Shown here: one piece after another, positions 1 through 21,878 of the stretch
How the letters are laid out: the number at the start of each line of letters is the position of its first letter
How positions within the stretch are numbered: position 1 is the stretch's first letter
DNA from: Caecitellus pseudoparvulus
Taxonomy: Eukaryota; Protista; Bigyra: Bicosoecida
Assembly: GCA_965644315.1 (NCBI GenBank)
Contig: CBFFRQ010000044.1
Coordinates: 1-64,000, forward strand
Reading direction: 5' to 3'
Length of the DNA: 64,000 nucleotides
Translations under genes and position numbers: made by a program
Notes under the pieces: generated by a model
Told to the model about the DNA's origin: nothing
What the model saw: the letters and a program-made list of their open reading frames with translations, nothing else
Databases searched by the model: none

Positions 1-835
1 TAACCCTAACCCTAACCCTAACCCTAACCCTAACCCTAACCCTAACCCTAACCCTAACCCTAACCCTAACCCTAACCCTAACCCTAACCCTAACCCTAAC
101 CCTAACCCTAACCCTAACCCTAACCCTAACCCTAACCCTAACCCTAACCCTAACCCTAACCCTAACCCTAACCCTAACCCTAACCCTAACCCTAACCCTA
201 ACCCTAACCCTAACCCTAACCCTAACCCTAACCCTAACCCTAACCCTAACCCTAACCCTAACCCTAACCCTAACCCTAACCCTAACCCTAACCCTAACCC
301 TAACCCTAACCCTAACCCTAACCCTAACCCTAACCCTAACCCTAACCCTAACCCTAACCCTAACCCTAACCCTAACCCTAACCCTAACCCTAACCCTAAC
401 CCTAACCCTAACCCTAACCCTAACCCTAACCCTAACCCTAACCCTAACCCTAACCCTAACCCTAACCCTAACCCTAACCCTAACCCTAACCCTAACCCTA
501 ACCCTAACCCTAACCCTAACCCTAACCCTAACCCTAACCCTAACCCTAACCCTAACCCTAACCCTAACCCTAACCCTAACCCTAACCCTAACCCTAACCC
601 TAACCCTAACCCTAACCCTAACCCTAACCCTAACCCTAACCCTAACCCTAACCCTAACCCTAACCCTAACCCTAACCCTAACCCTAACCCTAACCCTAAC
701 CCTAACCCTAACCCTAACCCTAACCCTAACCCTAACCCTAACCCTAACCCTAACCCTAACCCTAACCCTAACCCTAACCCTAACCCTAACCCTAACCTAA
801 CCCTAACCCTAACCCTAACCCTAACCTAACCAAAC
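1..835 (+). repeat. Terminal telomeric array (CCCTAA)n (TTAGGG on the minus strand)
   Basis: Uninterrupted CCCTAA hexamers from base 1. CCTAA/CCAAAC variants occur only in the last ~45 nt next to element A1. Confidence 0.99.
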
Positions 836-3757
836 TTTCCAAATGTCAAGCTAATCACAAGTTGTGAAGTGCTAACATTGCCTAATCCAGGCGCTCGTGC
901 ACCCAAGTGTGGTGTTGCACAGTGCTTGCTGGTTGGGTGGTGCGCACCGGGGCGGGGTAGTGCGAATTCCGCACACCATCGCACCGTGGCTCCCAGTTTG
1001 CGCCCTCGGTCGGGGCATGCACCTGGGATCGACATCAAAAGCATCATTGACAAGCATCATGAACGCCCAAGTGGATCAAGTCCTGGGGGTCCTCTTCGTG
1101 GAGGGGTGCCTGAAGCGCAAGCAAGTGCTCGGCCCCAGAACAGGTGTCTTCACTGACATGCCACGTCGGGGTGCCGCACGCACCTTCGAGCTTGGAGGAC
1201 CCCTGCCCAAGACTGATCATGATAGTTCATCTTCGGCACGGGACATGTGGCTCGAGGTCTATGGGGAAGCCGCCGAACGGCTGATCCCAGGGCTGAGTGC
1301 GGAATTCGGCAACGCCAATGCGGCCCTGCGCCAGGGACCCACCGGATCGCCAACCATCCTCGTCACGCTCGGAAGTGAGGGTGATTCACCAACAGTGGCA
1401 CGTCAACTTCGCATTCTTGCTGCTCAAGAGGACGACTTCGCCATTCGAGTCGGCCAAGGTGGGTTCGTCGCCGTGGCCTACACCAACACCAAGCAGTTCG
1501 CATCGGCGAAGGCGAAAGTGAAGGTGAAGGCCCACCCCACCGCCATCCAAGTGGCCCACCAAGTGACCAAGGAAGCAACCGAAATCGCCTGCCAGTCAGG
1601 TGATGTTGCCAAGGTCATGTGCCTCGTTAGGTCCCACTTCGACCATGGCCCCGTGCCAGCCCAAGCCGTCCGTCCCAGTGTCAGACAATCCGTCCCCTCC
1701 GAGGGTGATGCACCTGTCGACACCAAGACACCATCGACCTGGACTGACACTCAGCTCGACAAGGCACCGAAGAAGAAGAAGACCCGTCGAGGCAAGCGAG
1801 GAAAGGGCAAGTCAGCCGGACGATCCCTCACCTTCGAGGACGTCTTCATCAAGAACGTCCGGCCACCTGCACCTCGACCAACCTCACCACCTGCCACCCA
1901 AGGCTCACCCAAAGATACCGTCACCACCCCTGTGGTGCATGCCATGTTGCCTTCATCAAGGGTGCAGCGGGGCGTCGACCGCAAGTGGCCGTCCCCCACC
2001 CCGTCGGGCGAGGCAAGCCCCGAGGTGCACCGGTATCGGCCGTCTGCAGCAGCAGCATGGGAGGTGATCACAAGGGTGGTGCCTCTTCATGACAGTGTGC
2101 GGACACCCGAGCACCTGGCCGAGTACCCCATCAAGCCTGGCCCTCTGGCCGACCTGCTGTCATCGACCCACGTGTACTCTAACGTGGGGGGCGGGCCTGT
2201 GTCCAGGCCTGTCTCGAGACGGCAGCAGGGGAGAGGGTCTTCGAGGCTGGGGACCTCCTCCTACTCCAGCATGCAGCCACCATCAACGCTGCCCAGCTTG
2301 CCTTCAAGCACATGGTCAGGCAGCTGGAGGGGGTGGTCAGTGACTCGTCCAGCTCGGACATCATGGACGTCGGCCAGAAGCCACCCTCCCCCTTCCGCTC
2401 AGACGGGCAACGGGTGGCCGTCTTCCGCAACATGCTGCACCAGCACTCGCCGGATGACACCTTCCTGGCCCCAGGTACACCACCAGTCCTGCTTCCCGGC
2501 CTGCACCTGCTCATCGACCGCATCAACCAAGGGTACCGTGCCCCAGCCGGGCATGATGACCTTGGCCAGGCCGGCGTCGACCCCAGCCAGGTTGATGAAG
2601 AGGGTGACCAAGAGGGGCACCTCGACGGAGTGCTGTATGCCTTCGCACTTCGAGAGGTGTGGACCGACAACACGGCCCATCTGCAGCTCATCCTCGTCGA
2701 CCATGATCGAGGCAAGCTGGTGCTGTGGAACCCCGACATCCCTGACCTCCATGACGAGCTGCCCCTGCACAAGTGCATGACCCGGCTGGCAGCCGAAGGC
2801 ATCAACGTCTTGTACCGGATCTGGACCACACCCGAGGCGGGCAGTCCAGCACCCTTCCGGGACAGGCTTCGAGGGGCACTCCAGTCTCTCCGAGATGACT
2901 TCCCCCCCCTGCCTCACAAGGCCACCGACGGCACCGTGCACCCCCAGACCCTCATCGCTGGCAAGGGCACAAGGGTGGCCATGCCTCATGGGCGGATGAC
3001 CCGACAGCAGGCCGCCACCCTGGAGGCTGAGGTCAAGGACCCCCTCAAGCGGCTGGTGCCTGAAGACGGCGAGGGTCGCCTGCCCAAGGTCAAGGATGTG
3101 CCCCACATCTCGATCGGGCAGATGGGTGGACGCCTGATGTAAGTCACCTGTGGGGGCATACTCCCTGTGCCACACATGACTGAAGCTTTGTGTCGCGACC
3201 GACGCACATAGCTGACATCGGACATTGGAAAGTCCAACCCAACCTCACCATCACCAACCCAACATCGATACCAACACATCAGGACTCGGCTCAGTGGAAG
3301 GGGAAGGCACTTGCAGCAAGATCTGTGAGGCCGCCCCCAAACCTGAGCCGAAGGGACAGCCGGGCTGGGTCGTGTGCTTGCATCTCAGCAACACCCAGTC
3401 CGTGTCGAGTCCATATCCTCCAGCCCACACCGCCACCCAAGCCAAGCAAGTCGGGTCTCCACCCCTGGACATCGGACCGAGACGGACGAGACTGGACTGG
3501 ACGGACAAGACAAGAGTGGACCGAGACCTGGACCTACACCTCAAGACCATCCCACCGGGGCGGGCGCTGAAGCGCCAAGACAGACGGCGACTTATACAAC
3601 GGACACGAGTCTGTGCTAGTCGCAAAGCCGTGCAAGCGGTGCCGTCGTGGTGTCTGTGTCACTGCATTCTGTTGTGGCGCAGGTGGCACCACATGTCCAA
3701 GCCCAAGCTGTACCATGATGTAGCCTGCATGGAGGCAATCTGCAATGCATTGAGTAG
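836..3757 (+). mobile_element. Element A copy 1: non-autonomous telomeric non-LTR element (ORF1 only, no RT), ~2.92 kb
   Basis: Telomeric repeats on both sides; repeated at offset 3468 (4304-7225). Its protein is homologous to the N-terminal ~700 aa of element B and its last ~200 nt are homologous to the end of B. Confidence 0.9.
1059..3142 (+). CDS. Element A1 ORF1-like protein (~694 aa once a 1-nt frameshift at the G6 run 2186-2191 is restored)
   Basis: ORFs 897..2780 and 2312..3142 align in series to element B (FTDMPRRGAARTF, EDDF.vR.G.GGF, CVQACLETAAGE, PPVLLPGLH, LVDHDRG.LV.WNPDIPD). ATG 1059 is the likely start; 1017 is also possible. Confidence 0.8.
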
Positions 3758-4303
3758 CTAACCCCTAACCCTAACCCTAACCCTAACCCTAACCCTAACC
3801 CTAACCCTAACCCTAACCCTAACCCTAACCCTACCCCTAACCCTAACCCTAACCCTAACCCTAACCCTAACCCTAACCCTAACCCTAACCCTAACCCTAA
3901 CCCTAACCCTAACCCTAACCCTAACCCTAACCCTAACCCTAACCCTAACCCTAACCCTAACCCTAACCCTAACCCTAACCCTAACCCTAACCCTAACCCT
4001 AACCCTAACCCTAACCCTAACCCTAACCCTAACCCTAACCCTAACCCTAACCCTAACCCTAACCCTAACCCTAACCCTAACCCTAACCCTAACCCTAACC
4101 CTAACCCTAACCCTAACCCTAACCCTAACCCTAACCCTAACCCTAACCCTAACCCTAACCCTAACCCTAACCCTAACCCTAACCCTAACCCTAACCCTAA
4201 CCCTAACCCTAACCCTAACCCTAACCCTAACCCTAACCCTAACCCTAACCCTAACCCTAACCCTAACCCTAACCCTAACCCTAACCCTAACCCTAACCCT
4301 AAC
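3758..4303 (+). repeat. Interstitial telomeric tract (~546 bp, ~90 repeats)
   Basis: CCCTAA repeats with a CCCCTAA variant in the first unit and a CTACCC variant near 3831. Confidence 0.99.
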
Positions 4304-7225
4304 TTTCCAAATGTCAAGCTAATCACAAGTTGTGAAGTGCTAACATTGCCTAATCCAGGCGCTCGTGCACCCAAGTGTGGTGTTGCACAGTGCTTGCTGG
4401 TTGGGTGGTGCGCACCGGGGCGGGGTAGTGCGAATTCCGCACACCATCGCACCGTGGCTCCCAGTTTGCGCCCTCGGTCGGGGCATGCACCTGGGATCGA
4501 CATCAAAAGCATCATTGACAAGCATCATGAACGCCCAAGTGGATCAAGTCCTGGGGGTCCTCTTCGTGGAGGGGTGCCTGAAGCGCAAGCAAGTGCTCGG
4601 CCCCAGAACAGGTGTCTTCACTGACATGCCACGTCGGGGTGCCGCACGCACCTTCGAGCTTGGAGGACCCCTGCCCAAGACTGATCATGATAGTTCATCT
4701 TCGGCACGGGACATGTGGCTCGAGGTCTATGGGGAAGCCGCCGAACGGCTGATCCCAGGGCTGAGTGCGGAATTCGGCAACGCCAATGCGGCCCTGCGCC
4801 AGGGACCCACCGGATCGCCAACCATCCTCGTCACGCTCGGAAGTGAGGGTGATTCACCAACAGTGGCACGTCAACTTCGCATTCTTGCTGCTCAAGAGGA
4901 CGACTTCGCCATTCGAGTCGGCCAAGGTGGGTTCGTCGCCGTGGCCTACACCAACACCAAGCAGTTCGCATCGGCGAAGGCGAAAGTGAAGGTGAAGGCC
5001 CACCCCACCGCCATCCAAGTGGCCCACCAAGTGACCAAGGAAGCAACCGAAATCGCCTGCCAGTCAGGTGATGTTGCCAAGGTCATGTGCCTCGTTAGGT
5101 CCCACTTCGACCATGGCCCCGTGCCAGCCCAAGCCGTCCGTCCCAGTGTCAGACAATCCGTCCCCTCCGAGGGTGATGCACCTGTCGACACCAAGACACC
5201 ATCGACCTGGACTGACACTCAGCTCGACAAGGCACCGAAGAAGAAGAAGACCCGTCGAGGCAAGCGAGGAAAGGGCAAGTCAGCCGGACGATCCCTCACC
5301 TTCGAGGACGTCTTCATCAAGAACGTCCGGCCACCTGCACCTCGACCAACCTCACCACCTGCCACCCAAGGCTCACCCAAAGATACCGTCACCACCCCTG
5401 TGGTGCATGCCATGTTGCCTTCATCAAGGGTGCAGCGGGGCGTCGACCGCAAGTGGCCGTCCCCCACCCCGTCGGGCGAGGCAAGCCCCGAGGTGCACCG
5501 GTATCGGCCGTCTGCAGCAGCAGCATGGGAGGTGATCACAAGGGTGGTGCCTCTTCATGACAGTGTGCGGACACCCGAGCACCTGGCCGAGTACCCCATC
5601 AAGCCTGGCCCTCTGGCCGACCTGCTGTCATCGACCCACGTGTACTCTAACGTGGGGGGCGGGCCTGTGTCCAGGCCTGTCTCGAGACGGCAGCAGGGGA
5701 GAGGGTCTTCGAGGCTGGGGACCTCCTCCTACTCCAGCATGCAGCCACCATCAACGCTGCCCAGCTTGCCTTCAAGCACATGGTCAGGCAGCTGGAGGGG
5801 GTGGTCAGTGACTCGTCCAGCTCGGACATCATGGACGTCGGCCAGAAGCCACCCTCCCCCTTCCGCTCAGACGGGCAACGGGTGGCCGTCTTCCGCAACA
5901 TGCTGCACCAGCACTCGCCGGATGACACCTTCCTGGCCCCAGGTACACCACCAGTCCTGCTTCCCGGCCTGCACCTGCTCATCGACCGCATCAACCAAGG
6001 GTACCGTGCCCCAGCCGGGCATGATGACCTTGGCCAGGCCGGCGTCGACCCCAGCCAGGTTGATGAAGAGGGTGACCAAGAGGGGCACCTCGACGGAGTG
6101 CTGTATGCCTTCGCACTTCGAGAGGTGTGGACCGACAACACGGCCCATCTGCAGCTCATCCTCGTCGACCATGATCGAGGCAAGCTGGTGCTGTGGAACC
6201 CCGACATCCCTGACCTCCATGACGAGCTGCCCCTGCACAAGTGCATGACCCGGCTGGCAGCCGAAGGCATCAACGTCTTGTACCGGATCTGGACCACACC
6301 CGAGGCGGGCAGTCCAGCACCCTTCCGGGACAGGCTTCGAGGGGCACTCCAGTCTCTCCGAGATGACTTCCCCCCCCTGCCTCACAAGGCCACCGACGGC
6401 ACCGTGCACCCCCAGACCCTCATCGCTGGCAAGGGCACAAGGGTGGCCATGCCTCATGGGCGGATGACCCGACAGCAGGCCGCCACCCTGGAGGCTGAGG
6501 TCAAGGACCCCCTCAAGCGGCTGGTGCCTGAAGACGGCGAGGGTCGCCTGCCCAAGGTCAAGGATGTGCCCCACATCTCGATCGGGCAGATGGGTGGACG
6601 CCTGATGTAAGTCACCTGTGGGGGCATACTCCCTGTGCCACACATGACTGAAGCTTTGTGTCGCGACCGACGCACATAGCTGACATCGGACATTGGAAAG
6701 TCCAACCCAACCTCACCATCACCAACCCAACATCGATACCAACACATCAGGACTCGGCTCAGTGGAAGGGGAAGGCACTTGCAGCAAGATCTGTGAGGCC
6801 GCCCCCAAACCTGAGCCGAAGGGACAGCCGGGCTGGGTCGTGTGCTTGCATCTCAGCAACACCCAGTCCGTGTCGAGTCCATATCCTCCAGCCCACACCG
6901 CCACCCAAGCCAAGCAAGTCGGGTCTCCACCCCTGGACATCGGACCGAGACGGACGAGACTGGACTGGACGGACAAGACAAGAGTGGACCGAGACCTGGA
7001 CCTACACCTCAAGACCATCCCACCGGGGCGGGCGCTGAAGCGCCAAGACAGACGGCGACTTATACAACGGACACGAGTCTGTGCTAGTCGCAAAGCCGTG
7101 CAAGCGGTGCCGTCGTGGTGTCTGTGTCACTGCATTCTGTTGTGGCGCAGGTGGCACCACATGTCCAAGCCCAAGCTGTACCATGATGTAGCCTGCATGG
7201 AGGCAATCTGCAATGCATTGAGTAG
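4304..7225 (+). mobile_element. Element A copy 2 (apparently identical to copy 1)
   Basis: The internal ORF translations of 836-3757 recur identically at +3468; same 5' start (aac|tttccaaatg) and same 3' end (gcattgagtag). Confidence 0.9.
4527..6610 (+). CDS. Element A2 ORF1-like protein (same G6 frameshift at 5654-5659)
   Basis: Same translation as A1 (ORFs 4365..6248 and 5780..6610). Confidence 0.8.
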
Positions 7226-7240
7226 CTAACCCTAACCTAA
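7226..7240 (+). repeat. Short telomeric spacer CTAACCCTAACCTAA between A2 and B1
   Basis: Read directly. It is followed by 6 nt (AGAAGG, 7241-7246) that match neither the telomere nor element B at this position. Confidence 0.9.
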
Positions 7241-7246
7241 AGAAGG

Positions 7247-10200
7247 GTCACTCTCGTGAAGTCTCACTTGCGTCAAGCTTCTCCAGCTGCGCACCAAGAT
7301 CGCCAACACGTCCGACAATCCGTCCCCAAGAAGGGAGATGCTGCTGTCGACAAGGCGCCCATTCGACACAACATCAAGACATCCGCACAAACCCAACAGG
7401 CTCCAGGTAAACGCAAGAAGGTCAGGCGTGGTCAGCGCTCCAAAGCAAGCACGGCATCTACACATTCCAAAGTTGTACCAGGGCGAACCTTTGCCGACCT
7501 GTTCAAGACGCCTCCATCAGAAACGACTGCCCGAGAGAAACACCAACACGTGGTGCCATCAAGTCCTCCTGCAAGAATGCCCAAGCTGCAGACGGAGGCG
7601 GTGGTGCTTCCATCGTCACGAGTGCGAACTGGGCAACAAACGCGCTGGGACAAGCCATCAACCCTTGACCAAGATTCGAAGATGCAGGCACCTGTATCGG
7701 AGGACAGCGTGCCCGCATCTCAGACTACTACCTCCACAGCAACAACACTCATCTTGACGCCACCTGCGTCAACCCCTGAGTCGATATCAGAATCAGACAC
7801 CTCGCTCAGCCTGTCTGTACCTGACGCTGCACCTCAGCATATTGTGAAGGTTGTGAGGATGAAGGACTGCCCCCGAGTCCCTGGATCACTCCCCACCCAC
7901 GACATTCCAGCATCGTCACCGCTTGCGCGCCTGCTTGCTTCAGCGAGTGTGTACGGGAACAGAGACCAACGGCATTGTGTACAAGCCTGCTTGGAAACAG
8001 CGGCAGGGGAGAAGATCTTCGAGACTGAAGACCTCGTGGCTCTCCAGCATGCAGCTACTGTCGAGGCAGGACAGCGAGCCTATCGGAACCTGCGTCGTAG
8101 AGCTGCTGCAAACACATCGGACTCCTCCAGTTCTGATGTTCAGTGCACGATGCCAGCAGGCGGTGTCATGTCAGACTGCGCAGAGGATCAACTGGAAGCT
8201 CTTGCTCGCTTGCTGTTTCGCTTCACACCAAAGGACTCCCTTCTGCAAGCACAAGCACCACCTGTCCTTCTTCCCGGTTTGCATATGCTTCTCAACCGCA
8301 TGAACAGTGGGCACCGTGCCCTTCTTGGTGGGAGTAAACTCCATGGGGGCATCTGCCCTCAAGCAGTGATGTACGAGGACGGCCAAGACAAGTATTTCGA
8401 AGGTGTCCACTTTGCTTTTGCTCTGCATCGTCTCCAACACACTGACACTGCTCACCTTACGCTGGTTCTGGTCGATCATGATCGAGGAGTGTTGGTTGTA
8501 TGGAACCCAGACATTCCAGATGCAAGTGTTGAAGTGTCCTTCCACAACTGCATGGAACGTCTGCACGCCGATGCTGTAGAGATGGTCTACCGAGTATCAT
8601 CGACCCCCATGGTGGGCTCTCCAAGCCCCTTGAAAGAGAGACTACGCAATGTGATGCAGTCGCTGAAGCAAGACTTCCCCCCTCTCCCCTTTGCTGCGGA
8701 AGACGGGGAACTCCACCTCAAAACGTACATCGCTGGACAGTTCACCCGTGTTGCTCTCCCAACTGGACGCCTGACTAGACAGCAGGCCTCTGCTCTGGCA
8801 GACGCAAAAGAACATGACCCACTACTGAAGCTAATCCCACAAGACACAGATGCAATGCCTCCACGCTGGGAGCAAGGCCCGTGTACCCCAGTGGGAAAGT
8901 CAGGCACAACTTCCATCTCCATGGTGTCTTGGAATGTTGCAAGCTCCTGTGGGAACCACCTTCACGAAGTCATAGTCTGTGCGAAGTCGGCCTCGTCTCG
9001 ATCTTCAAGGATGGTGCTCTGCCTTACGGAGCCAGGCGGACATGGGACTTTGGACACGGAGATCATGGGACTGCAATGCTTCAGACCAAGTCCACCTGAT
9101 CGTCCACCAGGACGAAGTGAGGTCGCCTTGCTCATCGACAGAAGACTGCGGGCTCAACGGATGGGGGACCTTGGCCTTGATGGCCGCTGTGTTGTTGCTT
9201 GCACCATCCCCACAACGCCAAAGCCTCTTGCAATCATCGCGGCATATGTGCCAAACTGGCACACAGCGCAGCGAAAGAAGCCGTTAGCAGACCCAGATAC
9301 AAAGCTTCCTCACAGGCAGCAGATTTGGGAACAGCTCACAAATGCTGTTCAACATCTGAGGACAACCCACATGATCACACTCATGGGTGATCTGAACTGC
9401 CACCCAGGTCAACACGGGGTAACTTCGTGGGACACGTCATGCTGGCGCAACCAATCTGGCATCCCCGACCCGACGGACGACGTTCAGGAACTTGCGACTG
9501 TATGTGAACAGGCACAACTTCAGCCTGCTGGGGTTGGGGGACAGCCTACCCAAGCTACCTTTCAGAGAGTCTTGGATCACATCCTCGTATGTCCCTCGCT
9601 GCGGTCCCGGTTGGTAAAGCCCCTTGCTGTTGTCACAACATATTCAAGCGCCAGGAAGAAGAACCACCGAAAGATGATCCTCAGTGACCACCACATGCTC
9701 ACTGCCGGCGTTGCAGTCAAGCTGCCCCCCCGACCCAAAGCCTCCAGACAACATTCATCGACCCACTCTGTCCCCCCCTGGTGGGCATCGTCCACACGTG
9801 AGGGACTCAAGGCGCAGTACATGCACAGACGCCATCTTGATGCGTCTCTTGGGCCAGCAGACCTGCATGTCCCTGGACCTGGAGATGAGGCAGAAGCACT
9901 CCAAAGCTTGGACGCCCTCATTACTACCAGTGCTCGAACCACGCATGCCCAGTGCAAGTCCACATCACCTCAAATGATTCAGGCATTTGCTGACATACCA
10001 CGACTCAGCTCCCTGAAGAAACGCATGACAGCCAAGACGAGGTCCATACAGAAGCGACTTGTGAAACTCCGTCGGCGCAAGCATCTGCTGCGGCACTCCT
10101 CACTGCCTAGCTCGATCGAGGCTCTGCGCAAGGAGGAAGAGCGGGAACACATGCTGCTTGAAGACCTGCATGCGACGAGGACTGAAAGGAGGCAAGCGAT

Positions 10201-13200: not shown

Positions 13201-14250
13201 ATACACGACATGTTCGCACGCGGCGCTTTGAGCGGACTTACTTTCCTGTCAGGGCTGAACGCAGGCCCCCTCGCTCCTTCACGAGGCAGGCCACTCTCCT
13301 GGATTTTGGTCTCACACGGCCCGAAGCCCGTGATGACCCTCCATCGCCCTCTTCCAACTCGGCCATGTCCTCCGAGATGTCCTTGGAAAGTCCATCGTCT
13401 TCTGAATAGGCGGGGATCTGTGCGAGGCAAAGCGCAGAAACAGGCAAGCTTACATGTGTATCGTGGTGAGAACCACGGTCGTGGTTGGCTGTGAAGGCGA
13501 GGCTGCTACATGCGCTGTCCTTGATGCTTTGTTTTCTCTGTGAAAAGCAAGGATATTGGAAAGTGAATGTTGTCAGTACACGTACCTGTGTCTTCGGGGT
13601 CCACAGATAGATCCACTGGCGGCTCTGCGATGGTGCGGGCGGAATTTGGGACCGTGAACAGACGGGCACAGCGTGCAACGCCGCGCGCGGAACTTACAGG
13701 TTCGCCAGGTCCTGAATGATGAGATGGTTGAGTCATCCATGAACAGACGAAGGCCCTTGATGTGTTCTGGGTGGATGGGGGCGTTGTTCCGGCGGTGCGC
13801 GCTGCTACCACCGGCGTGGTGTAGTGCAGCACCGCCGTGAAACGCCACCCCCAAGGCGGCCACTGCGGCTCAGTTCAGCGCACAGTGGCCCCAGGCACGC
13901 GTGTAGTGCCTGGCAGAGGCCAAGAGATCTGGGGGACTGATGAATTATGATGCGAAGTGTGGACTGGGACGAAGTAGGAGTGGGCCCGGCCCCCTCTGGC
14001 TCAGCCGACTGAGCCGAGAGGGCGCGGGAGGGACAGTTCAGCATGTATGGGCGGGCGCGGGCGCGCCCTAGCAAGCGGCGGCTCATACAACGGACGTATG
14101 TCCGTGATGGCTGCAGACCCACGAGAGTGGGAGCCGCTGTGGTGCCTACTACAGTGCATTCGTGTGCTGTGGTACGCAAGGCACCACGAGTGATGCCCAA
14201 GCTGTACCGTGCAAGAGTGTGCGGAGGCAAGTTGCAATGCATTAAGTGAG
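7247..14250 (+). mobile_element. Element B copy 1: APE-RT non-LTR retrotransposon, 5'-truncated
   Basis: Matches B2 from position 14850 onward (offset 7602-7604); carries APE and RT motifs; ends at a telomeric tract with no poly(A). Confidence 0.95.
7256..13409 (+). CDS. B1 polyprotein (ORF1-like + APE + RT + CCHC), N-truncated, with a 2-nt frameshift at ~10449-10458
   Basis: ORFs 7256..10528 and 10482..13409. ORF1 runs into APE without a stop in this copy. Confidence 0.88.
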
Positions 14251-14316
14251 CTAACCCTAACCCTAACCCTAACCCTAACCCTAACCCCTAACCTCCCTAA
14301 CCCCTAACCCCTAACC
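14251..14316 (+). repeat. Interstitial telomeric tract (66 bp), degenerate toward B2
   Basis: About 5 perfect CTAACC units followed by CCCCTAA/CCTCCCTAA variants. Confidence 0.95.
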
Positions 14317-17300
14317 GAAAGCTCTTTGTGGATAAGTGCATTGCTGCGCGAGCAATGCGTGGGCCACGAACAGGCGGATTTACTGACATGCCGCGCCGAG
14401 GCGCTGCACGGACGTTCCAGCTTGGCGGAGTGCCAATCGACGAAGATCCTTCAACATCTTCATCAACCATTCGTGATTCTTGGCTTGAAGCCTACGGAGA
14501 AGCGGCGGAGGCCCAGTTCCCTGGCATCTGTGCGGAAGTTGGGCGTGGTGCAGTGGCGTTGCGCCGCCCACAAGGAGCCCCAGCTGCCCTGCTAGTCTCA
14601 CTCGGTGGAGGGAGTGACAGCGCAGAACTGGCACGGAGCATGCGGGAAGCAGCAGCACGTGAGGACGACTTCACTGTGCGCCTTGGAAGGGGTGGCTTCT
14701 TGGCCGTGGTGTTTCCAAACACACGCCAGTTTGTCGCTGCCAAGGGCAAGGTCCAAGCCAAAGCGCCAACCCTTGTGCTCAACGCTGCCCGGGAAATAAT
14801 GCCGCTAGCTACCAGCCTTGCAGTCAACACGGGAGATGTGTCGTCTATCGTCACTCTCGTGAAGTCTCACTTGCGTCAAGCTTCTCCAGCTGCGCACCAA
14901 GATCGCCAACACGTCCGACAATCCGTCCCCAAGAAGGGAGATGCTGCTGTCGACAAGGCGCCCATTCGACACAACATCAAGACATCCGCACAAACCCAAC
15001 AGGCTCCAGGTAAACGCAAGAAGGTCAGGCGTGGTCAGCGCTCCAAAGCAAGCACGGCATCTACACATTCCAAAGTTGTACCAGGGCGAACCTTTGCCGA
15101 CCTGTTCAAGACGCCTCCATCGGAAACGACTGCCCGAGAGAAACACCAACACGTGGTGCCATCAAGTCCTCCTGCAAGAATGCCCAAGCTGCAGACGGAG
15201 GCGGTGGTGCTTCCATCGTCACGAGTGCGAACTGGGCAACAAACGCGCTGGGACAAGCCATCAACCCTTGACCAAGATTCGAAGATGCAGGCACCTGTAT
15301 CGGAGGACAGCGTGCCCGCATCTCAGACTACTACCTCCACAGCAACAACACTCATCTTGACGCCACCTGCGTCAACCCCTGAGTCGATATCAGAATCAGA
15401 CACCTCGCTCAGCCTGTCTGTACCTGACGCTGCACCTCAGCATATTGTGAAGGTTGTGAGGATGAAGGACTGCCCCCGAGTCCCTGGATCACTCCCCACC
15501 CACGACATTCCAGCATCGTCACCGCTTGCGCGCCTGCTTGCTTCAGCGAGTGTGTACGGGAACAGAGACCAACGGCATTGTGTACAAGCCTGCTTGGAAA
15601 CAGCGGCAGGGGAGAAGATCTTCGAGACTGAAGACCTCGTGGCTCTCCAACATGCAGCTACCGTCGAGGCAGGACAGCGAGCCTACCGGAACCTGCGTCG
15701 TAGAGCTGCTGCAAACACATCGGACTCCTCCAGTTCTGATGTTCAGTGCACGATGCCAGCAGGCGGTGTCATGTCAGACTGCGCAGAGGATCAACTGGAA
15801 GCTCTTGCTCGCTTGCTGTTTCGCTTCACACCAAAGGACTCCCTTCTGCAAGCACAAGCACCACCTGTCCTTCTTCCCGGTTTGCATATGCTTCTCAACC
15901 GCATGAACAGTGGGCACCGTGCCCTTCTTGGTGGGAGTAAACTCCATGGGGGCATCTGCCCTCAAGCAGTGATGTACGAGGACGGCCAAGACAAGTATTT
16001 CGAAGGTGTCCACTTTGCTTTTGCTCTGCATCGTCTCCAACACACTGACACTGCTCACCTTACGCTGGTTCTGGTCGATCATGATCGAGGAGTGTTGGTT
16101 GTATGGAACCCAGACATTCCAGATGCAAGTGTTGAAGTGTCCTTCCACAACTGCATGGAACGTCTGCACGCCGATGCTGTAGAGATGGTCTACCGAGTAT
16201 CATCGACCCCCATGGTGGGCTCTCCAAGCCCCTTGAAAGAGAGACTACGCAATGTGATGCAGTCGCTGAAGCAAGACTTCCCCCTCTCCCCTTTGCTGCG
16301 GAAGACGGGGAACTCCACCTCAAAACGTACATCGCTGGACAGTTCACCCGTGTTGCTCTCCCAACTGGACGCCTGACTAGACAGCAGGCCTCTGCTCTGG
16401 CAGACGCAAAAGAACATGACCCACTACTGAAGCTAATCCCACAAGACACAGATGCAATGCCTCCACGCTGGGAGCAAGGCCCGTGTACCCCAGTGGGAAA
16501 GTCAGGCACAACTTCCATCTCCATGGTGTCTTGGAATGTTGCAAGCTCCTGTGGGAACCACCTTCACGAAGTCATAGTCTGTGCGAAGTCGGCCTCGTCT
16601 CGATCTTCAAGGATGGTGCTCTGCCTTACGGAGCCAGGCGGACATGGGACTTTGGACACGGAGATCATGGGACTGCAATGCTTCAGACCAAGTCCACCTG
16701 ATCGTCCACCAGGACGAAGTGAGGTCGCCTTGCTCATCGACAGAAGACTGCGGGCTCAACGGATGGGGGACCTTGGCCTTGATGGCCGCTGTGTTGTTGC
16801 TTGCACCATCCCCACAACGCCAAAGCCTCTTGCAATCATCGCGGCATATGTGCCAAACTGGCACACAGCGCAGCGAAAGAAGCCGTTAGCAGACCCAGAT
16901 ACAAAGCTTCCTCACAGGCAGCAGATTTGGGAACAGCTCACAAATGCTGTTCAACATCTGAGGACAACCCACATGATCACACTCATGGGTGATCTGAACT
17001 GCCACCCAGGTCAACACGGGGTAACTTCGTGGGACACGTCATGCTGGCGCAACCAATCTGGCATCCCCGACCCGACGGACGACGTTCAGGAACTTGCGAC
17101 TGTATGTGAACAGGCACAACTTCAGCCTGCTGGGGTTGGGGGACAGCCTACCCAAGCTACCTTTCAGAGAGTCTTGGATCACATCCTCGTATGTCCCTCG
17201 CTGCGGTCCCGGTTGGTAAAGCCCCTTGCTGTTGTCACAACATATTCAAGCGCCAGGAAGAAGAACCACCGAAAGATGATCCTCAGTGACCACCACATGC

Positions 17301-20300
17301 TCACTGCCGGCGTTGCAGTCAAGCTGCCCCCCCGACCCAAAGCCTCCAGACAACATTCATCGACCCACTCTGTCCCCCCCTGGTGGGCATCGTCCACACG
17401 TGAGGGACTCAAGGCGCAGTACATGCACAGACGCCATCTTGATGCGTCTCTTGGGCCAGCAGACCTGCATGTCCCTGGACCTGGAGATGAGGCAGAAGCA
17501 CTCCAAAGCTTGGACGCCCTCATTACTACCAGTGCTCGAACCACGCATGCCCAGTGCAAGTCCACATCACCTCAAATGATTCAGGCATTTGCTGACATAC
17601 CACGACTCAGCTCCCTGAAGAAACGCATGACAGCCAAGACGAGGTCCATACAGAAGCGACTTGTGAAACTCCGTCGGCGCAAGCATCTGCTGCGGCACTC
17701 CTCACTGCCTAGCTCGATCGAGGCTCTGCGCAAGGAGGAAGAGCGGGAACACATGCTGCTTGAAGACCTGCATGCGACGAGGACTGAAAGGAGGCAAGCG
17801 ATGCGCAGGTGCACCAGACTCGTGGCAAAGAAGCACCAAGCCGCGAAGTTCCAGGTACAGCACCGCATCAGGGAGCTTACACTGACCGACCCATTCACTG
17901 CGCATCAACACATCCGGAAGTTGGCTGGGAAGAAGCGGAAAGGCACAGTGTCCTGCATCCAGTCAGTGCTCGACAGCAACGGGACACTCATCACGGAACC
18001 TGCTCTCGTTCGGTCCACGGTGCGGGACCACATGTCCCAAATCATCAGCTCCCCCCCTAGAAAGCTTGCCCCACTGAAGTTCGGTTTGGCCCGGCTACTG
18101 CCGCCTGCACAAGATGCTACCGCCTCTCATGATGCTTGGGTCCCAAGTGTGGACCTCATCATGAGAAAGATTCAGTCACTCAACCTACACCGCAACCCTG
18201 GCACTGGAAGCTTCCAAGCTGAACATCTGAAGTACGCCAGTGAAATCTTCAGGAAGAAGTATGCTGGTACCCTCCGCCAAGCCATCAGCACTGGCTCCTG
18301 CCCTGAGGAGTACCACTGTGGCGTCGGGACTCTCATCCCAAAGGCTGCTAGCCAACCCGGACGAGTACAGACATACCGCCTCATTGTTTGTCGCCCACCT
18401 CAAGCCAAGCTGTTCTTCTCTGTGGTAGCAGCTTGTGTGGAAGACTGGGTCCAAAGATGGATCTCTCCAGAACAAGCTGGCTTCACTCATGCTCGAAACA
18501 CGCATGAACAGATACTGGCACTACAAGAAACTTCTGCTGCGTATCTCCGAACAAAGCCGGACGCCAGTGTCCTCATACTCTTTGTTGACTTCAGAAGCGC
18601 CTTCGATACTGTCAGTCACGGTGCGATCATTGAGATCCTTGAGAGCGCAAATCTCCCGAGCGCCCTACTCGAATGTGTGAAAGACTACATGCGGCGAGCT
18701 TCTGTTGCCATCCACACGGGGCATGGCCTCTGCAACCCCCTGCCGGTGACAAACGGTGTCCCACAGGGTGGAGCCCTGTCACCTCTTCTGTTTAAGATTG
18801 CCATAGACGTTCTCTCTCACCGGCTCAGAGAACTACCAAAGCAGGGGGTGGCGGGTGCAGGAGTGCCCACACCCCGAGGCCGAGTCACCCACACGCTGTA
18901 TGCGGATGATCTGGCCTGCCTGGCTACCACACCAGCTGCCCTCCATCGAATGTTTCTCGAAGTCAAATCTGTGGGCAGTCGTGTTGGACTGACCATAAAC
19001 CCCAACAAGTCAGGTGTCATGATCTTGACTGGAGCGCAACATGTCAGAGGCACATCAGCGACAGAGAGACGAAAGCTGGTCTGGAGATCCCGCTGGCTCA
19101 AGTCTGGGGAGATGTTGAAAGTAAAGGGGGCGCCCATCCAACGTACGAGTGTCTACTCGTACCTTGGTGCTCCACTTTCAGAAAACTTCAGCCGCACCAG
19201 GCTGCTTGCCTTGAAGCATGCAACACAATCTTGCACCCGGGCTGGCTTCGCCTGCGGTGCCCTCCTTAGTGGCGTCTGGCTTAGCCCAAGTCTCAAACAG
19301 CGGGTCGGTGCTGCAGCTGTCAACAGCGCCGCCGACTATATCCTTGCCTCTCAGGTCAGCAACTCCGTGCTACCTCTTCGAGATCTTGACCGTGGACTGG
19401 CCATTGCCTTCTCTAAGGCCCAGCTTGGCATGCAGAGTTCACTAGCTCGGATGCACAATTATGCAAAGTTGGCTGTGTGTGGCATCCTGCCAGCACACAT
19501 CCGAGCGACAAGGTTACGCAGCAACATCTTCAAAAAGTTGCTGAAGAACTTGCACAACCCCACGCCTATAGTCAAAGCCCTGTCATCCAGCCTTCATCAA
19601 GCCCTGCGCCAGCTTCCGCCCACCATGGACATGGCCTTTGTCTTTCAGGCCAATGTCCGCCTGGATAGGAAAGGACCGGGAGGAATTCCAGACCCATGGG
19701 CCCTGCACGGTCTCCTTGACCTTTGGCTACATGGTTGCCTCCCTAATCGCCGGGCACTTGAGGCATCCTGTCAAGAGCCAGCCGCGGACTCATCATCCGA
19801 AGCACAGGGGATCGACATCCTTGCTCGGTTGGATCCCCCTCCTCCCAAGGTCCAACTTCTCGGACTTGCTGCCCCGGAGCTGTCAGACCTCTCCCAACCC
19901 CCAACCTTCCCAGACAAGACCTCTTGGTCGATCAGACAACATGTAGTCGCCTCGTTCCTCCATGTTGCACAAGCGGTTCAATGCCAAGAAGTTGGCTACA
20001 CCACCACTGGCGAGATGAAGCGCTCAAGGCGGCCTAAGGAGTTCCACGTTGGGCTGGGGGCCTGCTTCTTTACATGGCTCCACCCCATCCCCTCTTCTGT
20101 GAACCCACTCTTTTGGGTCCACGAAGATGACCAACAGAGTCGAGTCAAGATCCACCTCTGGCAAACGCTGCAGGTCTTCAATGGGGGAGACACCCCTACA
20201 CTCTTCAGCGAATGTCCCCTGTGTCATGGAGTTTCATGGTGTACACTCCATGAACATGTCCTCTTTGACTGCCCCCACTACAAACTGCAACCATCGCGGA

Positions 20301-21854
20301 CGGATGTGATGGTTGCAGTGCGAAACTTCCTTGAGCGGTCAAATGATGCGGTGAGGGGAGTGGCCAACGCCCAACACCTTGAAGTGCCCCCCCTCATCCT
20401 GGATGCTGTTGTCCGGGCTGCTGAAGGCCGCTCTGTGGGCCGACCGGGTCGCTTGATCCTTCTTCGCCTGCTACTGTGCGGTCAGTGGCCCCATCGGTGG
20501 GGCCAGCCATCAGCACAGCAGCCTTGGAGTCCTGAGGCGGCCGCAGTCCTGAGCAACCCTCATGTTGCTCTCCGCGGCCCCTCAGGTCTTCTCCGTCCTC
20601 CCAAGTACTGGAAACAAGCTCTGGCTGCCGCCACGAGCTTCTCTGTATCTGCGTGGGACGTGCTGGTAACATGCATGCTGGGACGTACCTCACAGGCTGA
20701 TCGCCATGTCCAGGTACACGCCAGGTACCTGTGGTGGGCTGCACACGGCCGCACGAGTCCACTCCCGGGCTTCTCCACCCCTGACCCAAGCGCTGTGAGA
20801 AAGCATACACGACATGTTCGCACGCGGCGCTTTGAGCGGACTTACTTTCCTGTCAGGGCTGAACGCAGGCCCCCTCGCTCCTTCACGAGGCAGGCCACTC
20901 TCCTGGATTTTGGTCTCACACGGCCCGAAGCCCGTGATGACCCTCCATCGCCCTCTTCCAACTCGGCCATGTCCTCCGAGATGTCCTTGGAAAGTCCATC
21001 GTCTTCTGAATAGGCGGGGATCTGTGCGAGGCAAAGCGCAGAAACAGGCAAGCTTACATGTGTATCGTGGTGAGAACCACGGTCGTGGTTGGCTGTGAAG
21101 GCGAGGCTGCTACATGCGCTGTCCTTGATGCTTTGTTTTCTCTGTGAAAAGCAAGGATATTGGAAAGTGAATGTTGTCAGTACACGTACCTGTGTCTTCG
21201 GGGTCCACAGATAGATCCACTGGCGGCTCTGCGATGGTGCGGGCGGAATTTGGGACCGTGAACAGACGGGCACAGCGTGCAACGCCGCGCGCGGAACTTA
21301 CAGGTTCGCCAGGTCCTGAATGATGAGATGGTTGAGTCATCCATGAACAGACGAAGGCCCTTGATGTGTTCTGGGTGGATGGGGGCGTTGTTCCGGCGGT
21401 GCGCGCTGCTACCACCGGCGTGGTGTAGTGCAGCACCGCCGTGAAACGCCACCCCCAAGGCGGCCACTGCGGCTCAGTTCAGCGCACAGTGGCCCCAGGC
21501 ACGCGTGTAGTGCCTGGCAGAGGCCAAGAGATCTGGGGGACTGATGAATTATGATGCGAAGTGTGGACTGGGACGAAGTAGGAGTGGGCCCGGCCCCCTC
21601 TGGCTCAGCCGACTGAGCCGAGAGGGCGCGGGAGGGACAGTTCAGCATGTATGGGCGGGCGCGGGCGCGCCCTAGCAAGCGGCGGCTCATACAACGGACG
21701 TATGTCCGTGATGGCTGCAGACCCACGAGAGTGGGAGCCGCTGTGGTGCCTACTACAGTGCATTCGTGTGCTGTGGTACGCAAGGCACCACGAGTGATGC
21801 CCAAGCTGTACCGTGCAAGAGTGTGCGGAGGCAAGTTGCAATGCATTAAGTGAG
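14317..21854 (+). mobile_element. Element B copy 2: near-full-length APE-RT non-LTR retrotransposon (7.54 kb; lacks 5' UTR and start)
   Basis: Begins in a region homologous to A codon ~12 (LFVDKC vs LFVEGC); ends gcattaagtgag|ctaacc. Confidence 0.95.
14328..21013 (+). CDS. B2 polyprotein: ORF1-like, APE endonuclease (~16520-17300), RT (~18200-19170), CCHC finger (~20213-20272); 1-nt frameshift in a C run at ~16280
   Basis: APE motifs: SWNV, LTE, AYVP, GDLN, LDHI, SDH. RT motifs: QAGF, DFRSAFD, GVPQGGALSPLLF, YADD (18899), GLTINPNKS, YLG. Zinc finger: CPLC..HEHVLFDC. Confidence 0.93.
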
Positions 21855-21878
21855 CTAACCCCTAACCCTCCACCCTCA
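21855..21878 (+). repeat. Innermost degenerate telomeric remnant at the telomere/subtelomere boundary
   Basis: ctaacccctaaccctccaccctca directly after the B2 3' end. Confidence 0.8.

What the first reader, a model, noticed from the sequence alone, without database searches (positions are those of the whole stretch)
836..21854. Two-component telomeric retrotransposon system: an ORF1-only element plus an autonomous RT partner in a polarised array inside TTAGGG telomeres
Seen: the outer 22 kb reads telomere-A-telomere-A-telomere-B-telomere-B-telomere. All four elements lie on the C-rich strand with 5' ends toward the tip, and none occurs elsewhere in the window. A and B are diverged relatives: A's protein aligns with B's first ~700 aa and stops (..GQMGGRLM*) just before the point where B's APE domain begins (..GKSGTTSISMVSWNV). 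A also keeps B's 3'-terminal RNA domain. Known parallels are Drosophila HeT-A (gag only) with TART/TAHRE, Magnaporthe MoTeR1/2, Bombyx TRAS/SART and Giardia GilM/GilT. Inference: A is a long-diverged, protein-coding non-autonomous family mobilised in trans by B's RT. That would be a convergent HeT-A/TART-like partnership coexisting with telomerase-type repeats in a protist. I do not recognise it as a described family.
Basis: partly seen in the sequence, partly recalled or inferred. Interest (0 to 1): 0.92.

Follow-up and report, generated by a model that had tools for sequence, protein, structure and literature searches.

The report
Telomere-specific retrotransposons with a protein-only partner
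The chromosome end of this marine protist carries a one-way stack of jumping genes that land only in telomere repeats: a reverse-transcriptase-bearing family, and a far more abundant relative that keeps only the front third of the protein and must borrow the enzyme, a fruit-fly-like set-up in a cell that still has telomerase.

Summary
The outer 22 kb reads telomere, A1, telomere, A2, telomere, B1, telomere, B2, telomere. All four elements have their sense strand on the C-rich strand, with 5' ends toward the tip.

B is an APE+RT non-LTR retrotransposon. A (2.9 kb) encodes only the N-terminal ~694 aa and stops 5 aa before the APE domain. A shares B's conserved 5' leader and a ~180-nt structured 3' RNA domain with clear covariation.

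Genome-wide there are 71 A 3' ends. Every junction inspected or pattern-matched reads ..GAGTAG|CTAAC. All 59 forward ones lie within 30 kb of a contig start. At least 20 different downstream contexts and graded 5' truncations point to repeated retrotransposition.

- The autonomous elements have one giant ORF (~2,150-2,250 aa), not ORF1 plus ORF2.
- All four window copies are frameshifted as assembled. Short-read contigs restore three of the four frames, so these look like homopolymer errors.
- B2 is also 5'-truncated.
- The genome holds at least four autonomous families (B, C, D, E), about equally distant from A. The partner need not be B.

A TERT gene is present. A's protein looks like an RRM plus a papain-type cysteine peptidase; this is a weak lead.

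I found no description in the papers searched. First-stage notes on other pieces of this genome describe the same system. I class it as a new variant of a known kind.

The parts
1..831 (.). Terminal telomere tract, (CCCTAA)n on the + strand (about 138 units). This is the left chromosome end.
832..3757 (+). Element A1, the non-autonomous family (2,926 nt). 5' leader 832-1058. ORF from ATG 1059 to stop 3140-3142. 3' UTR 3143-3757. No poly(A); the element ends ..GAGTAG and runs into CTAACCC.
2185..2190 (+). G6 run that splits the A reading frame in both window copies (also at 5653-5658). At least 20 other genome copies have G7, as do short-read contigs from three runs. G7 gives an uninterrupted 694-aa ORF.
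1167..1481 (+). A protein residues 37-141: candidate RRM-like domain. This is the best-predicted part of the model, with beta-alpha-beta-beta-alpha-beta order.
   Evidence: (2w7a, L1 ORF1p central domain: Z 5.9, 91 aligned, rmsd 3.6). Weak lead.
2145..2914 (+). A protein residues 363-619: candidate papain-fold cysteine peptidase. Invariant Asn375-x5-Cys381 (Cys codon 2198-2200), His541 (2678-2680) and Asn558 (2729-2731). The G-run frameshift lies inside this stretch.
   Evidence: invariant columns, including the distant P0002; Josephin, calpain, GtgE, YopQ; Z 5-7.3; Peptidase_C58/C39 neighbours, 0.82-0.86. Weak lead.
3558..3736 (+). Structured 3' RNA domain of A1 (10 helices). The same domain is at 7026-7204 (A2), 14049-14228 (B1) and 21652-21831 (B2).
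3758..4303 (.). Interstitial telomere tract between A1 and A2 (about 90 units).
4304..7225 (+). Element A2, identical to A1 apart from the 5' junction nucleotides.
7226..7240 (.). 15-nt telomeric tract (CTAACCCTAACCTAA) between the A2 3' end and the truncated B1 5' end.
7241..14250 (+). Element B1, an autonomous-type element that is 5'-truncated (lacks 533 nt present in B2). The N-terminal region and APE are in one frame (7241-10528). A 2-nt gap near 10448-10454 shifts the frame as assembled; short-read contigs carry 2 extra nt there.
14251..14316 (.). 66-nt telomeric tract with CCCCTAA variants.
14317..21853 (+). Element B2 (7,537 nt), 5'-truncated by ~250 nt relative to full-length relatives. 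N-terminal region 14319-16376. A C5 run near 16288, where B1 and the short-read contigs have C6, breaks the frame. The APE-RT frame runs 16136-21013. 3' UTR 21014-21853.
16526..17326 (+). APE endonuclease domain of B2. All catalytic motifs are present (SWNV, LTEPGG, GDLN, LDHI, SDH).
18335..19048 (+). Reverse-transcriptase domain of B2 (RVT_1, E 5e-30), with YADD at 18902-18913.
20213..20281 (+). C-terminal Cys/His knuckle (CPLC..H..C), as found in many LINE ORF2 tails.
   Evidence: read from the translation.
21854..21870 (.). Last short telomere-like tract (CTAACCCCTAACCCT), followed by unique subtelomeric DNA.

Best explanation
This is a clade of telomere-specific non-LTR (LINE-type) retrotransposons in a telomerase-positive marine protist, together with a protein-coding non-autonomous derivative.

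Autonomous elements (B here; related families C, D and E elsewhere in the genome) are ~7.6-7.8 kb. Each encodes one polyprotein: an N-terminal ~700-aa region, an APE endonuclease, an RT and a Cys/His knuckle. The ORF is flanked by a conserved 5' leader and by a 3' UTR whose last ~180 nt fold into a conserved multi-helix RNA.

Element A keeps the leader, the N-terminal region (694 aa, stop just before APE) and the 3' RNA domain. It has no enzyme.

Proposed mechanism (inferred):
1. The RNA ends in ..GAGUAG followed by CUAACCC(UAACCC)n, with no poly(A).
2. This tail pairs with the telomeric G strand ending ..GGTTAG-3'.
3. The RT, bound to the 3' RNA domain, primes cDNA synthesis there. This gives one fixed orientation (5' end toward the tip) and one fixed 3' register.
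4. Incomplete copying or later erosion gives 5' truncations.
5. Telomerase then re-extends the new end. Full-length 5' ends read (CTA)ACTTTCC, so the cDNA ends ..GTTAG-3', in register with the repeats.

A's RNA is copied by an RT made by one of the autonomous families, through the shared 3' domain. A is currently the most successful family.

Whether the primer is an APE nick inside the tract or the natural, possibly critically short, chromosome end is unresolved.
For: Shown:
- Domains and catalytic motifs.
- Single-ORF architecture. P0001 (called at 2,159 aa; open from an upstream ATG for 2,192 aa) sits on a metagenome scaffold flanked on both sides by CCCTAA repeats. B1's C6 version fuses the N-terminal region to APE, and short-read contigs agree.
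- A is colinear with the N-terminal region and ends at the APE boundary.
- The A ORF is intact with G7 in at least 20 copies and in contigs of three runs.
- There are 71 A 3' ends. All 59 forward ones lie within 30 kb of contig starts.
- All 30 inspected 3' junctions read GAGTAG|CTAAC, with at least 20 different downstream contexts. A further 65 match the same junction pattern genome-wide.
- Graded 5' truncations keep intact 3' ends, down to 25-nt stubs.
- 31 element 5' ends are capped in register by telomere repeats.
- The 3' domain has 49 pairs, 96% paired against 32-46% in slid controls. 14 pairs carry compensatory changes, and 0 of 500 shuffles reach the observed values.
- The first ~100 nt of the 5' leader are nearly identical between A, C and D.
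- The genome has a TERT gene.
- The same A-to-telomere and A-to-A junctions occur in independent runs.
- Of 24 listed between-strain differences in the A ORF, 12 are synonymous and 12 are not, which indicates purifying selection.
Against: - No RNA data exist: no RNA run holds the element. Transcript ends, expression and the pairing step are therefore inferred.
- All four window copies are defective as assembled: each has a frameshift, and both B copies are also 5'-truncated.
- Identical copies and identical A-CTAAC-A junctions could also spread by break-induced replication or gene conversion between chromosome ends.
- Contig lengths were not available, so the terminal position of the 12 reverse-strand copies is inferred from orientation and adjacent repeats.
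- No autonomous family has a 3' domain close to A's (56-65% identity). Cross-recognition is assumed, not shown.
Confidence: 0.8

Rival explanations
1. Endonuclease model. The elements insert inside existing telomere tracts, as Bombyx TRAS and SART do. The APE nicks the G strand after TTAG, TPRT follows, and CTAAC is a 5-bp target-site duplication.
For: All APE catalytic motifs are conserved in B, P0001 and the distant P0002. Full-length copies are flanked by ..CTAAC on the left and CTAAC.. on the right. SART1 and TRAS1 work this way (PMC7265360, PMC2868851).
Against: Most tracts downstream of 3' ends are very short: about 19 of 30 distinct tracts are 26 nt or less, and many A-to-A joints have only CTAAC. 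Terminal tracts, by contrast, are 0.3 to over 1.5 kb. Random nicking in such a tract would not give this pattern. SART1 needs at least 3 repeats (PMC7265360). 5' junctions carry irregular first repeats and extra A's, as expected for de novo telomere addition.
Confidence: 0.45
2. End-priming (healing) model. The RT uses the natural 3' G-tail, preferentially of critically short telomeres, with no nick. Each element was once the chromosome terminus and was then re-capped by telomerase, as with Drosophila HeT-A/TART attachment and endonuclease-independent L1 insertion.
For: The interstitial tracts are mostly very short. The A-CTAAC-A joints fit priming on a previous element's ..GTTAG-3' cDNA end. 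The first repeats at 5' junctions vary (CCTAA-A, CCCAAA). The youngest family, A, is usually the most distal.
Against: The APE domain is kept intact. The short tracts could have shrunk after insertion. No direct observation of a terminal addition exists.
Confidence: 0.45
3. The arrays are mainly a product of recombination (break-induced replication or unequal exchange between chromosome ends). The elements themselves are now inactive relics.
For: A copies are 100% identical. The same A-CTAAC-A junction recurs on many contigs. All four window copies are defective as assembled. MoTeR arrays are known to expand by BIR (PMC7367193).
Against: At least 20 different 3' flanks and many different 5' truncation points, each with its own telomere junction, need independent events. 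Short-read contigs restore three of the four window frameshifts. Intact ORFs of 694 aa and ~2,190 aa exist. Related strains carry 1-3% diverged but still open copies.
Confidence: 0.1
4. A is a recent internal-deletion derivative of B, or of another RT-bearing element in this genome.
For: A and B share the same order of parts and the same boundaries.
Against: A is only 43-45% aa identical to B, C and D, and 56-65% identical in the 3' domain. That is as far apart as those families are from each other. No element with A-type ends and an RT was found.
Confidence: 0.03

Closest known systems
Drosophila HeT-A / TART / TAHRE (Jockey-clade telomeric LINEs)
   Same: Head-to-tail arrays with 5' ends toward the tip. 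The most abundant element (HeT-A) codes only for the non-enzymatic protein and depends on an RT-bearing relative (PMC4700185, PMC5537684). The long 3' UTR matters for recognition.
   Different: Drosophila lacks telomerase and TTAGGG-type repeats, and its elements end in oligo(A). Here a TERT gene and canonical repeats are present, there is no poly(A), the autonomous elements have a single ORF, and the protein has no Gag-type knuckles. No sequence relationship was detected.
Magnaporthe MoTeR1 / MoTeR2 and Fusarium FoTeRs (CRE/SLACS-like, REL-endonuclease)
   Same: Inserted in TTAGGG telomeres of a telomerase-positive organism. Always 5' end outward. Head-to-tail arrays separated by tracts from half a repeat to over 20 repeats. 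5' truncations with telomere seeds. A non-autonomous partner shares the 5' and 3' termini. The 5' end is telomere-like (PMC7367193, PMC12857005).
   Different: Those use a C-terminal restriction-enzyme-like endonuclease, whereas this clade has an N-terminal-side APE. The MoTeR2 insert has no obvious function, whereas A keeps a conserved 694-aa ORF. Here the 3' end is a ~180-nt structured domain rather than 77 nt of shared sequence.
Bombyx TRAS1 / SART1 (R1 clade)
   Same: APE-type LINEs that insert in telomeric repeats at one register and in one orientation. The RT recognises the 3' UTR (PMC7265360, PMC2868851).
   Different: Those have two ORFs with a Gag-like ORF1 and a poly(A) tail, and no protein-only partner is described. 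The APE here is too diverged to match any solved endonuclease by sequence. The RT does not group with any labelled clade.
Mammalian HAL1 ('half-L1') and stringent LINE/SINE pairs such as UnaL2/UnaSINE1 (from my own knowledge, not checked in papers here)
   Same: HAL1 is a LINE derivative that keeps only the ORF1 coding part. Stringent pairs are mobilised through a shared structured 3' tail.
   Different: None of these is telomere-specific. A corresponds to the N-terminal part of a single polyprotein rather than a separate ORF1.
Giardia GilM/GilT and Chlorella Zepp (from my own knowledge; only GilT is mentioned, in PMC12857005)
   Same: Protist or algal LINE-like elements stacked at chromosome ends in one orientation.
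   Different: No protein-only partner and no structured shared 3' domain are reported for them, as far as I know. No similarity appeared in the searches.

Membership tests
Non-LTR (LINE) retrotransposon, APE type | Reverse transcriptase of the LINE type with an intact active site | tested here: met
   RVT_1 E 5e-30. Best solved relatives are L1 ORF2p (E 9e-19) and R2 (E 3e-16). YADD is present.
Non-LTR (LINE) retrotransposon, APE type | APE (Exo_endo_phos) endonuclease N-terminal to the RT, with catalytic residues | tested here: met
   PF03372 E 2e-6, above the curated cut-off. The N, E, D-N, D and D-H motifs were read in the translation.
Non-LTR (LINE) retrotransposon, APE type | No LTRs; copies 5'-truncated with a common 3' end | tested here: met
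   B1 lacks 533 nt of B2. A copies start at positions 246, 528, 1028, 1185, 2425, 2758 and 2825, all ending at 2926.
Non-LTR (LINE) retrotransposon, APE type | Poly(A) or simple-repeat 3' tail | tested here: not met
   There is no poly(A). The 3' end runs into CTAACCC repeats. Some LINEs do have repeat tails, so this does not exclude membership.
Telomere-specific LINE (functional class) | All copies in telomeric repeats, with one orientation and one register | tested here: met
   71 3' ends; the 59 forward ones lie within 30 kb of contig starts. All 30 inspected junctions are GAGTAG|CTAAC, and 65 match the same junction pattern genome-wide. 31 5' ends are capped in register. The terminal position of reverse-strand copies is inferred only.
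R1 clade (TRAS/SART) | RT and APE group with R1-clade references; two ORFs with Gag-like ORF1; poly(A) | tested here: not met
   Single ORF, no poly(A), and no sequence match to solved TRAS1 or R1 endonucleases. A phylogeny with curated references was not possible.
Jockey clade HeT-A/TART/TAHRE | Telomerase absent; the elements themselves form the telomere; oligo(A) junctions; Gag with zinc knuckles | tested here: not met
   Telomerase_RBD E 7e-21 in a 1,389-aa open frame. Canonical repeats cap every array. No knuckles in the A protein.
MoTeR/FoTeR (CRE-like) | Restriction-enzyme-like endonuclease C-terminal to the RT | tested here: not met
   The endonuclease is APE and lies upstream of the RT. 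Pfam scans found no other domain in B, P0001 or P0002. The REL motif was not searched by pattern.
Non-autonomous partner mobilised through a shared 3' tail (stringent LINE/SINE logic) | Partner lacks RT but shares a conserved, structured 3' end with the autonomous element | tested here: met
   Ten helices are shared by A and five autonomous lineages, with 14 covarying pairs. Actual trans-mobilisation cannot be tested with these tools.
Papain-fold cysteine peptidase (C-terminal half of A's protein) | Asn/Gln-x5-Cys at a helix start, then His and Asn/Asp on adjacent strands; papain-like fold | tested here: inconclusive
   Invariant N-x5-C, H and N/D, including in the 23%-identical P0002. Fold hits are Josephin, calpain, GtgE and YopQ, but with Z at most 7.3 on models of pLDDT 45. 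No Pfam or PDB sequence hit.

The most novel reading that the evidence does not exclude
The elements are not mere telomere parasites. They act as a back-up end-healing system that works with telomerase.
- The RNA's 3' tail (CUAACCCUAAC, the same word as a TTAGGG telomerase template) lets the RT prime on critically short G-tails without a nick.
- The element's 5' CUAAC end hands the new terminus back to telomerase in register.
- A's RRM-plus-peptidase protein is the telomere-targeting or end-protecting factor, and the autonomous polyprotein releases the same product by self-cleavage at the G-x-x-G site just before APE.

That would be a HeT-A-like mutualism caught at a stage where telomerase is still present.
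Probability: 0.2. Interest if true: 0.85.

Novelty: new variant of a known kind. Interest (0 to 1): 0.62.

Why it matters
Telomere-dedicated retrotransposons have arisen several times: in Drosophila, Bombyx, Magnaporthe and Fusarium, Giardia and Chlorella. This one combines features so far seen separately:
- an APE-type enzyme, as in TRAS and SART;
- coexistence with telomerase and short interstitial TTAGGG tracts, as in MoTeR;
- a dominant, protein-coding, enzyme-less partner, as in HeT-A.

It adds a single polyprotein with a possible built-in cysteine peptidase and a covariation-supported 3' RNA handle.

It offers a natural system for three questions: how an RT-less element wins against its helpers, how a LINE RT and telomerase share one substrate, and whether the Drosophila arrangement can start while telomerase is still there.

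The element family also marks chromosome ends in marine metagenomes. Finally, its homopolymer frameshifts are a caution for annotation of long-read assemblies.

Tried and rejected
- **Remote homologues of A's protein.** phmmer against 1.84 billion representatives returned only a 48-aa fragment of A itself. Pfam found nothing. A profile against PDB sequences found nothing.
- **APE against PDB sequences.** No meaningful hit.
- **Rfam on 1-22500 at E up to 1.** Nothing, so there is no known ribozyme or RNA family in the leader or the 3' domain.
- **AlphaFold models.** Models of A's protein and of its C-terminal domain came out at pLDDT 45. Foldseek gave no hit better than E 0.075. VIA hits were Z 7.3 or below. 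I treat the domain calls as leads only. The Atlas feature search on residues 1-200 gave no usable hit.
- **Organism identity.** The oxoprolinase gene's best named relatives are only 52-56% identical and spread over algae, stramenopiles and holozoans. Run names are coded. I considered a bicosoecid such as Cafeteria, because other notes on this genome mention Ngaro elements and virophage fragments. I could not test this, and the Cafeteria paper does not describe telomeric LINEs.
- **RNA evidence.** No RNA run holds the element.
- **More genome loci.** B, C and E copies elsewhere were mapped by coordinates only, and contig lengths are unknown.
- **RT tree.** It could only use unnamed database hits labelled by Pfam architecture, not curated clade references. 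The first tree run did not finish.
- **Programmed frameshifting at the A G-run.** Rejected, because short-read contigs and most copies simply have G7.

Full report
**1. What is in the window**

Tandem-repeat and pattern scans show CCCTAA repeats only in the C-strand orientation. They lie at 1-831, 3758-4303 and 14251-14316, with short tracts at 7226-7240 and 21854-21870. Four elements lie between them:
- A1, 832-3757
- A2, 4304-7225
- B1, 7241-14250
- B2, 14317-21853

A1 and A2 are identical over 2,922 nt. B1 and B2 are 99.9% identical, and B1 lacks B2's first 533 nt. Neither family recurs in the remaining 42 kb. That region carries ordinary intronless eukaryotic genes. The sense strand of all four elements is the C-rich strand, so their 5' ends face the chromosome tip.

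**2. What the elements encode**

B has an APE endonuclease and a LINE-type RT.
- All APE catalytic motifs, the RT YADD motif and a C-terminal Cys/His knuckle are present.
- The nearest solved RTs are L1 ORF2p and R2.
- The nearest database proteins beyond the clade are only 22-28% identical.
- In a quick tree, B groups with P0001 and P0002 on a long stem. It sits outside the groups marked by DUF6451 (RTE-like architecture) or RNase H. Curated clade references were not available, so the clade remains unassigned.

A has no enzyme domain. Its protein is colinear with the N-terminal ~700 aa of B at 44-45% identity. It stops 5 residues before the SWNV start of APE.

**3. Frames, and a correction**

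As assembled, every copy in the window is frameshifted.
- A has a G6 run at 2185-2190 and at 5653-5658 that splits its ORF.
- B2 has C5 where B1 has C6, near 16288.
- B1 has a 2-nt gap near 10448.

At least 20 other A copies in the genome have G7. That gives one 694-aa ORF.

I laid Logan contigs of four runs on 4500-10499. The contigs of the probable source sample (X1), a marine metagenome (X5) and another organism (X7) behaved the same way:
- all carry the extra G;
- all carry 2 extra nt at 10448;
- none shows an indel at B1's C6.

The A and B1 shifts, and by inference B2's C5, are therefore most likely long-read homopolymer errors or minority variants.

The intact autonomous form is thus a single polyprotein, not ORF1 plus ORF2. 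This agrees with two proteins found in metagenomes:
- P0001 is called at 2,159 aa and is open from an upstream ATG for 2,192 aa.
- P0002 is called at 2,150 aa.

P0001's 7.7-kb scaffold is a complete element flanked on both sides by CCCTAA repeats. It has the same 5' and 3' termini as A.

**4. Genome-wide behaviour**

The genome is 30.6 Mb in 215 contigs.
- A has at least 45 full-length copies at ~100% identity, plus copies truncated at seven different 5' positions.
- Its 3'-terminal 17-mer occurs 71 times: 59 forward, all within 30 kb of a contig start, and 12 reverse.
- 65 of these continue directly as CTAACC. The rest I looked at are head-to-tail joints, GAGTAG-CTAAC-TTTCC.
- In 30 fetched loci every 3' junction has the same register, and the DNA beyond the tract differs in at least 20 ways. 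These are independent events.
- 31 element 5' ends are followed by telomere repeats in register.
- k-mer depth in the source run is ~3,100-3,800 for A against ~230-270 for B.

B-like copies are few. Other autonomous lineages exist at other chromosome ends:
- C, about 74% nt identical to B;
- D, 97% identical to the metagenome scaffold;
- E, known here only from its 3' ends.

Full-length B relatives carry a ~250-nt leader that B2 lacks.

**5. The RNA ends**

I aligned the last 260 nt of A and of six representatives of the autonomous lineages. RNAalifold gave ten helices with 49 pairs.
- On that structure 96.4% of cells pair, against 32-46% when partners are slid.
- 14 pairs show changes on both sides, against 0-5 in the slid controls.
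- No shuffle of 500 reaches the observed values.

In the window the domain lies at 3558-3736, 7026-7204, 14049-14228 and 21652-21831. Rfam has no match.

The first ~100 nt of the 5' leader are almost identical in A, C and D. The coding parts of these families are only 43-45% identical at the protein level.

A is about as far from each autonomous family as those families are from each other. No RT-bearing element with A-type ends was found. A is therefore an old, independent lineage that must borrow an RT. Which helper it uses is open.

**6. A's protein**

Sequence searches find no relatives outside the clade. Both AlphaFold models are poor, at pLDDT 45. Two patterns nevertheless recur across two aligners.

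Residues 37-141 are the best-predicted part and resemble RRMs.
- The L1 ORF1p central domain matches at Z 5.9 with 91 of 99 residues aligned.
- Foldseek probability for the same match is 0.77-0.87, but at E about 0.2-0.3, which is not significant.

Residues ~356-600 repeatedly hit papain-clan cysteine peptidases.
- Hits include Josephin at Z 7.3, calpain, staphopain, Cif, GtgE and YopQ.
- The language-model neighbours are Peptidase_C58, Peptidase_C39 and YopQ, at 0.82-0.86.
- The alignment has invariant Asn-x5-Cys, His and Asn/Asp, even in P0002 at 23% identity.
- The Cys sits at the start of a predicted helix, and the His and Asn on neighbouring strands.

I rate a papain-fold peptidase at roughly 55% and an RRM at roughly 45%. 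If the peptidase is real, it could free the N-terminal product from APE-RT near a conserved G-x-x-G site just upstream of APE. A's own stop codon lies at almost the same place. This is speculation.

**7. Mechanism**

Two things are shown: one orientation, and one 3' register with no poly(A). The rest is inferred.
- The RNA carries a CUAACCC(UAACCC)n tail that pairs with the G strand ending GGTTAG-3'.
- The RT is held by the 3' domain and starts cDNA synthesis there.
- Telomerase later extends the new end. TERT is present: Telomerase_RBD E 7e-21 in a 1,389-aa open frame.

Is the primer an APE nick or the natural end? For a nick:
- the APE domain is intact;
- CTAAC flanks full-length copies on both sides, like a target-site duplication.

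For end-priming:
- About 19 of 30 distinct tracts downstream of 3' ends are 26 nt or shorter, and many joints have only CTAAC. Terminal tracts are 0.3 to over 1.5 kb.
- The first repeats at 5' junctions are irregular.
- The youngest family is usually the most distal.

I leave this at about even odds. Recombination between chromosome ends surely adds to the arrays, as in Magnaporthe (PMC7367193). It cannot explain the many distinct junctions.

**8. Comparison and novelty**

- The array architecture and the autonomous/non-autonomous pair match MoTeR1/MoTeR2 (PMC7367193) and FoTeRs (PMC12857005). Those elements use a REL endonuclease, and MoTeR2's insert is non-functional.
- The protein-only dominant partner matches HeT-A with TART/TAHRE (PMC4700185, PMC5537684). 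Drosophila, however, has no telomerase, and its elements have oligo(A) junctions.
- The APE and the fixed register recall TRAS and SART (PMC7265360). Those have two ORFs and poly(A).

No paper found in four literature searches describes this system. The organism could not be named.

First-stage notes on other pieces of the same genome describe the same arrays. They are unchecked and agree with what I measured here.

Verdict: a real, active-looking, telomere-specific LINE clade with a protein-coding non-autonomous partner. It is a new variant of a known kind.

Noticed in passing
G000:C77:25738-26142 (- strand), outside the window: A telomerase reverse transcriptase candidate: Telomerase_RBD E 7e-21 inside a 1,389-aa open frame without stops.
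   Followed up: partly
L026:1460-1500, L001:1485-1500, also G000:C177:9363-9422: Extreme 5'-truncated A stubs of ~25 nt (just the terminal ..GGCAATCTGCAATGCATTGAGTAG) sit between short telomere tracts. They look like aborted reverse-transcription events followed by re-capping.
   Followed up: partly
window 2185-2190, 5653-5658, ~10448, ~16288: All four frame-breaking differences lie in G or C homopolymer runs. Short-read contigs directly contradict three of them, and B2's C5 near 16288 was not covered by the stretch laid. The assembly probably carries systematic homopolymer errors that will break gene models elsewhere too.
   Followed up: yes
L032 (coral metagenome contig, 7,899 nt): A distant relative (P0002, 31% identical in APE-RT and ~20-23% in the N-terminal region) has the same single-ORF architecture. 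Its contig has no telomere repeats at either end. The clade therefore extends to another, unidentified organism associated with corals.
   Followed up: partly
L006:4431-4490 (G000:C34, near 228 kb): Downstream of one A copy, the telomere tract is followed by an AT-rich stretch (..ACCTATTTTTTTATAAATG..) unlike the GC-rich host DNA. It may be the low-GC viral-type insert that other notes on this genome mention.
   Followed up: no
window 25265-63003: The subtelomeric genes are long, apparently intronless ORFs: a DEAD-box helicase, a trypsin-PDZ protease, a 1,836-aa TPR protein, a protein disulfide isomerase, a 1,620-aa JAB/MPN protein, an FAE1-type ketoacyl synthase and a 1,561-aa oxoprolinase. 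The oxoprolinase's closest named relatives are only 52-56% identical.
   Followed up: partly
window 3758-3770, 14251-14316, 21854-21870: The telomere units next to element 3' ends often carry an extra C (CCCCTAA), and those next to 5' ends often lack one (CCTAA). This suggests imprecise first repeats at the joints.
   Followed up: partly
window 826-930; L031:44-150; L015:4430-4530: The first ~100 nt of the 5' leader are almost identical in families A, C and D, although their proteins are only 43-45% identical. The leader contains telomere-like words (CTAATC, CTAACA, CCTAATCC). Either selection on it is strong (promoter or telomerase seed) or it is exchanged between families.
   Followed up: partly
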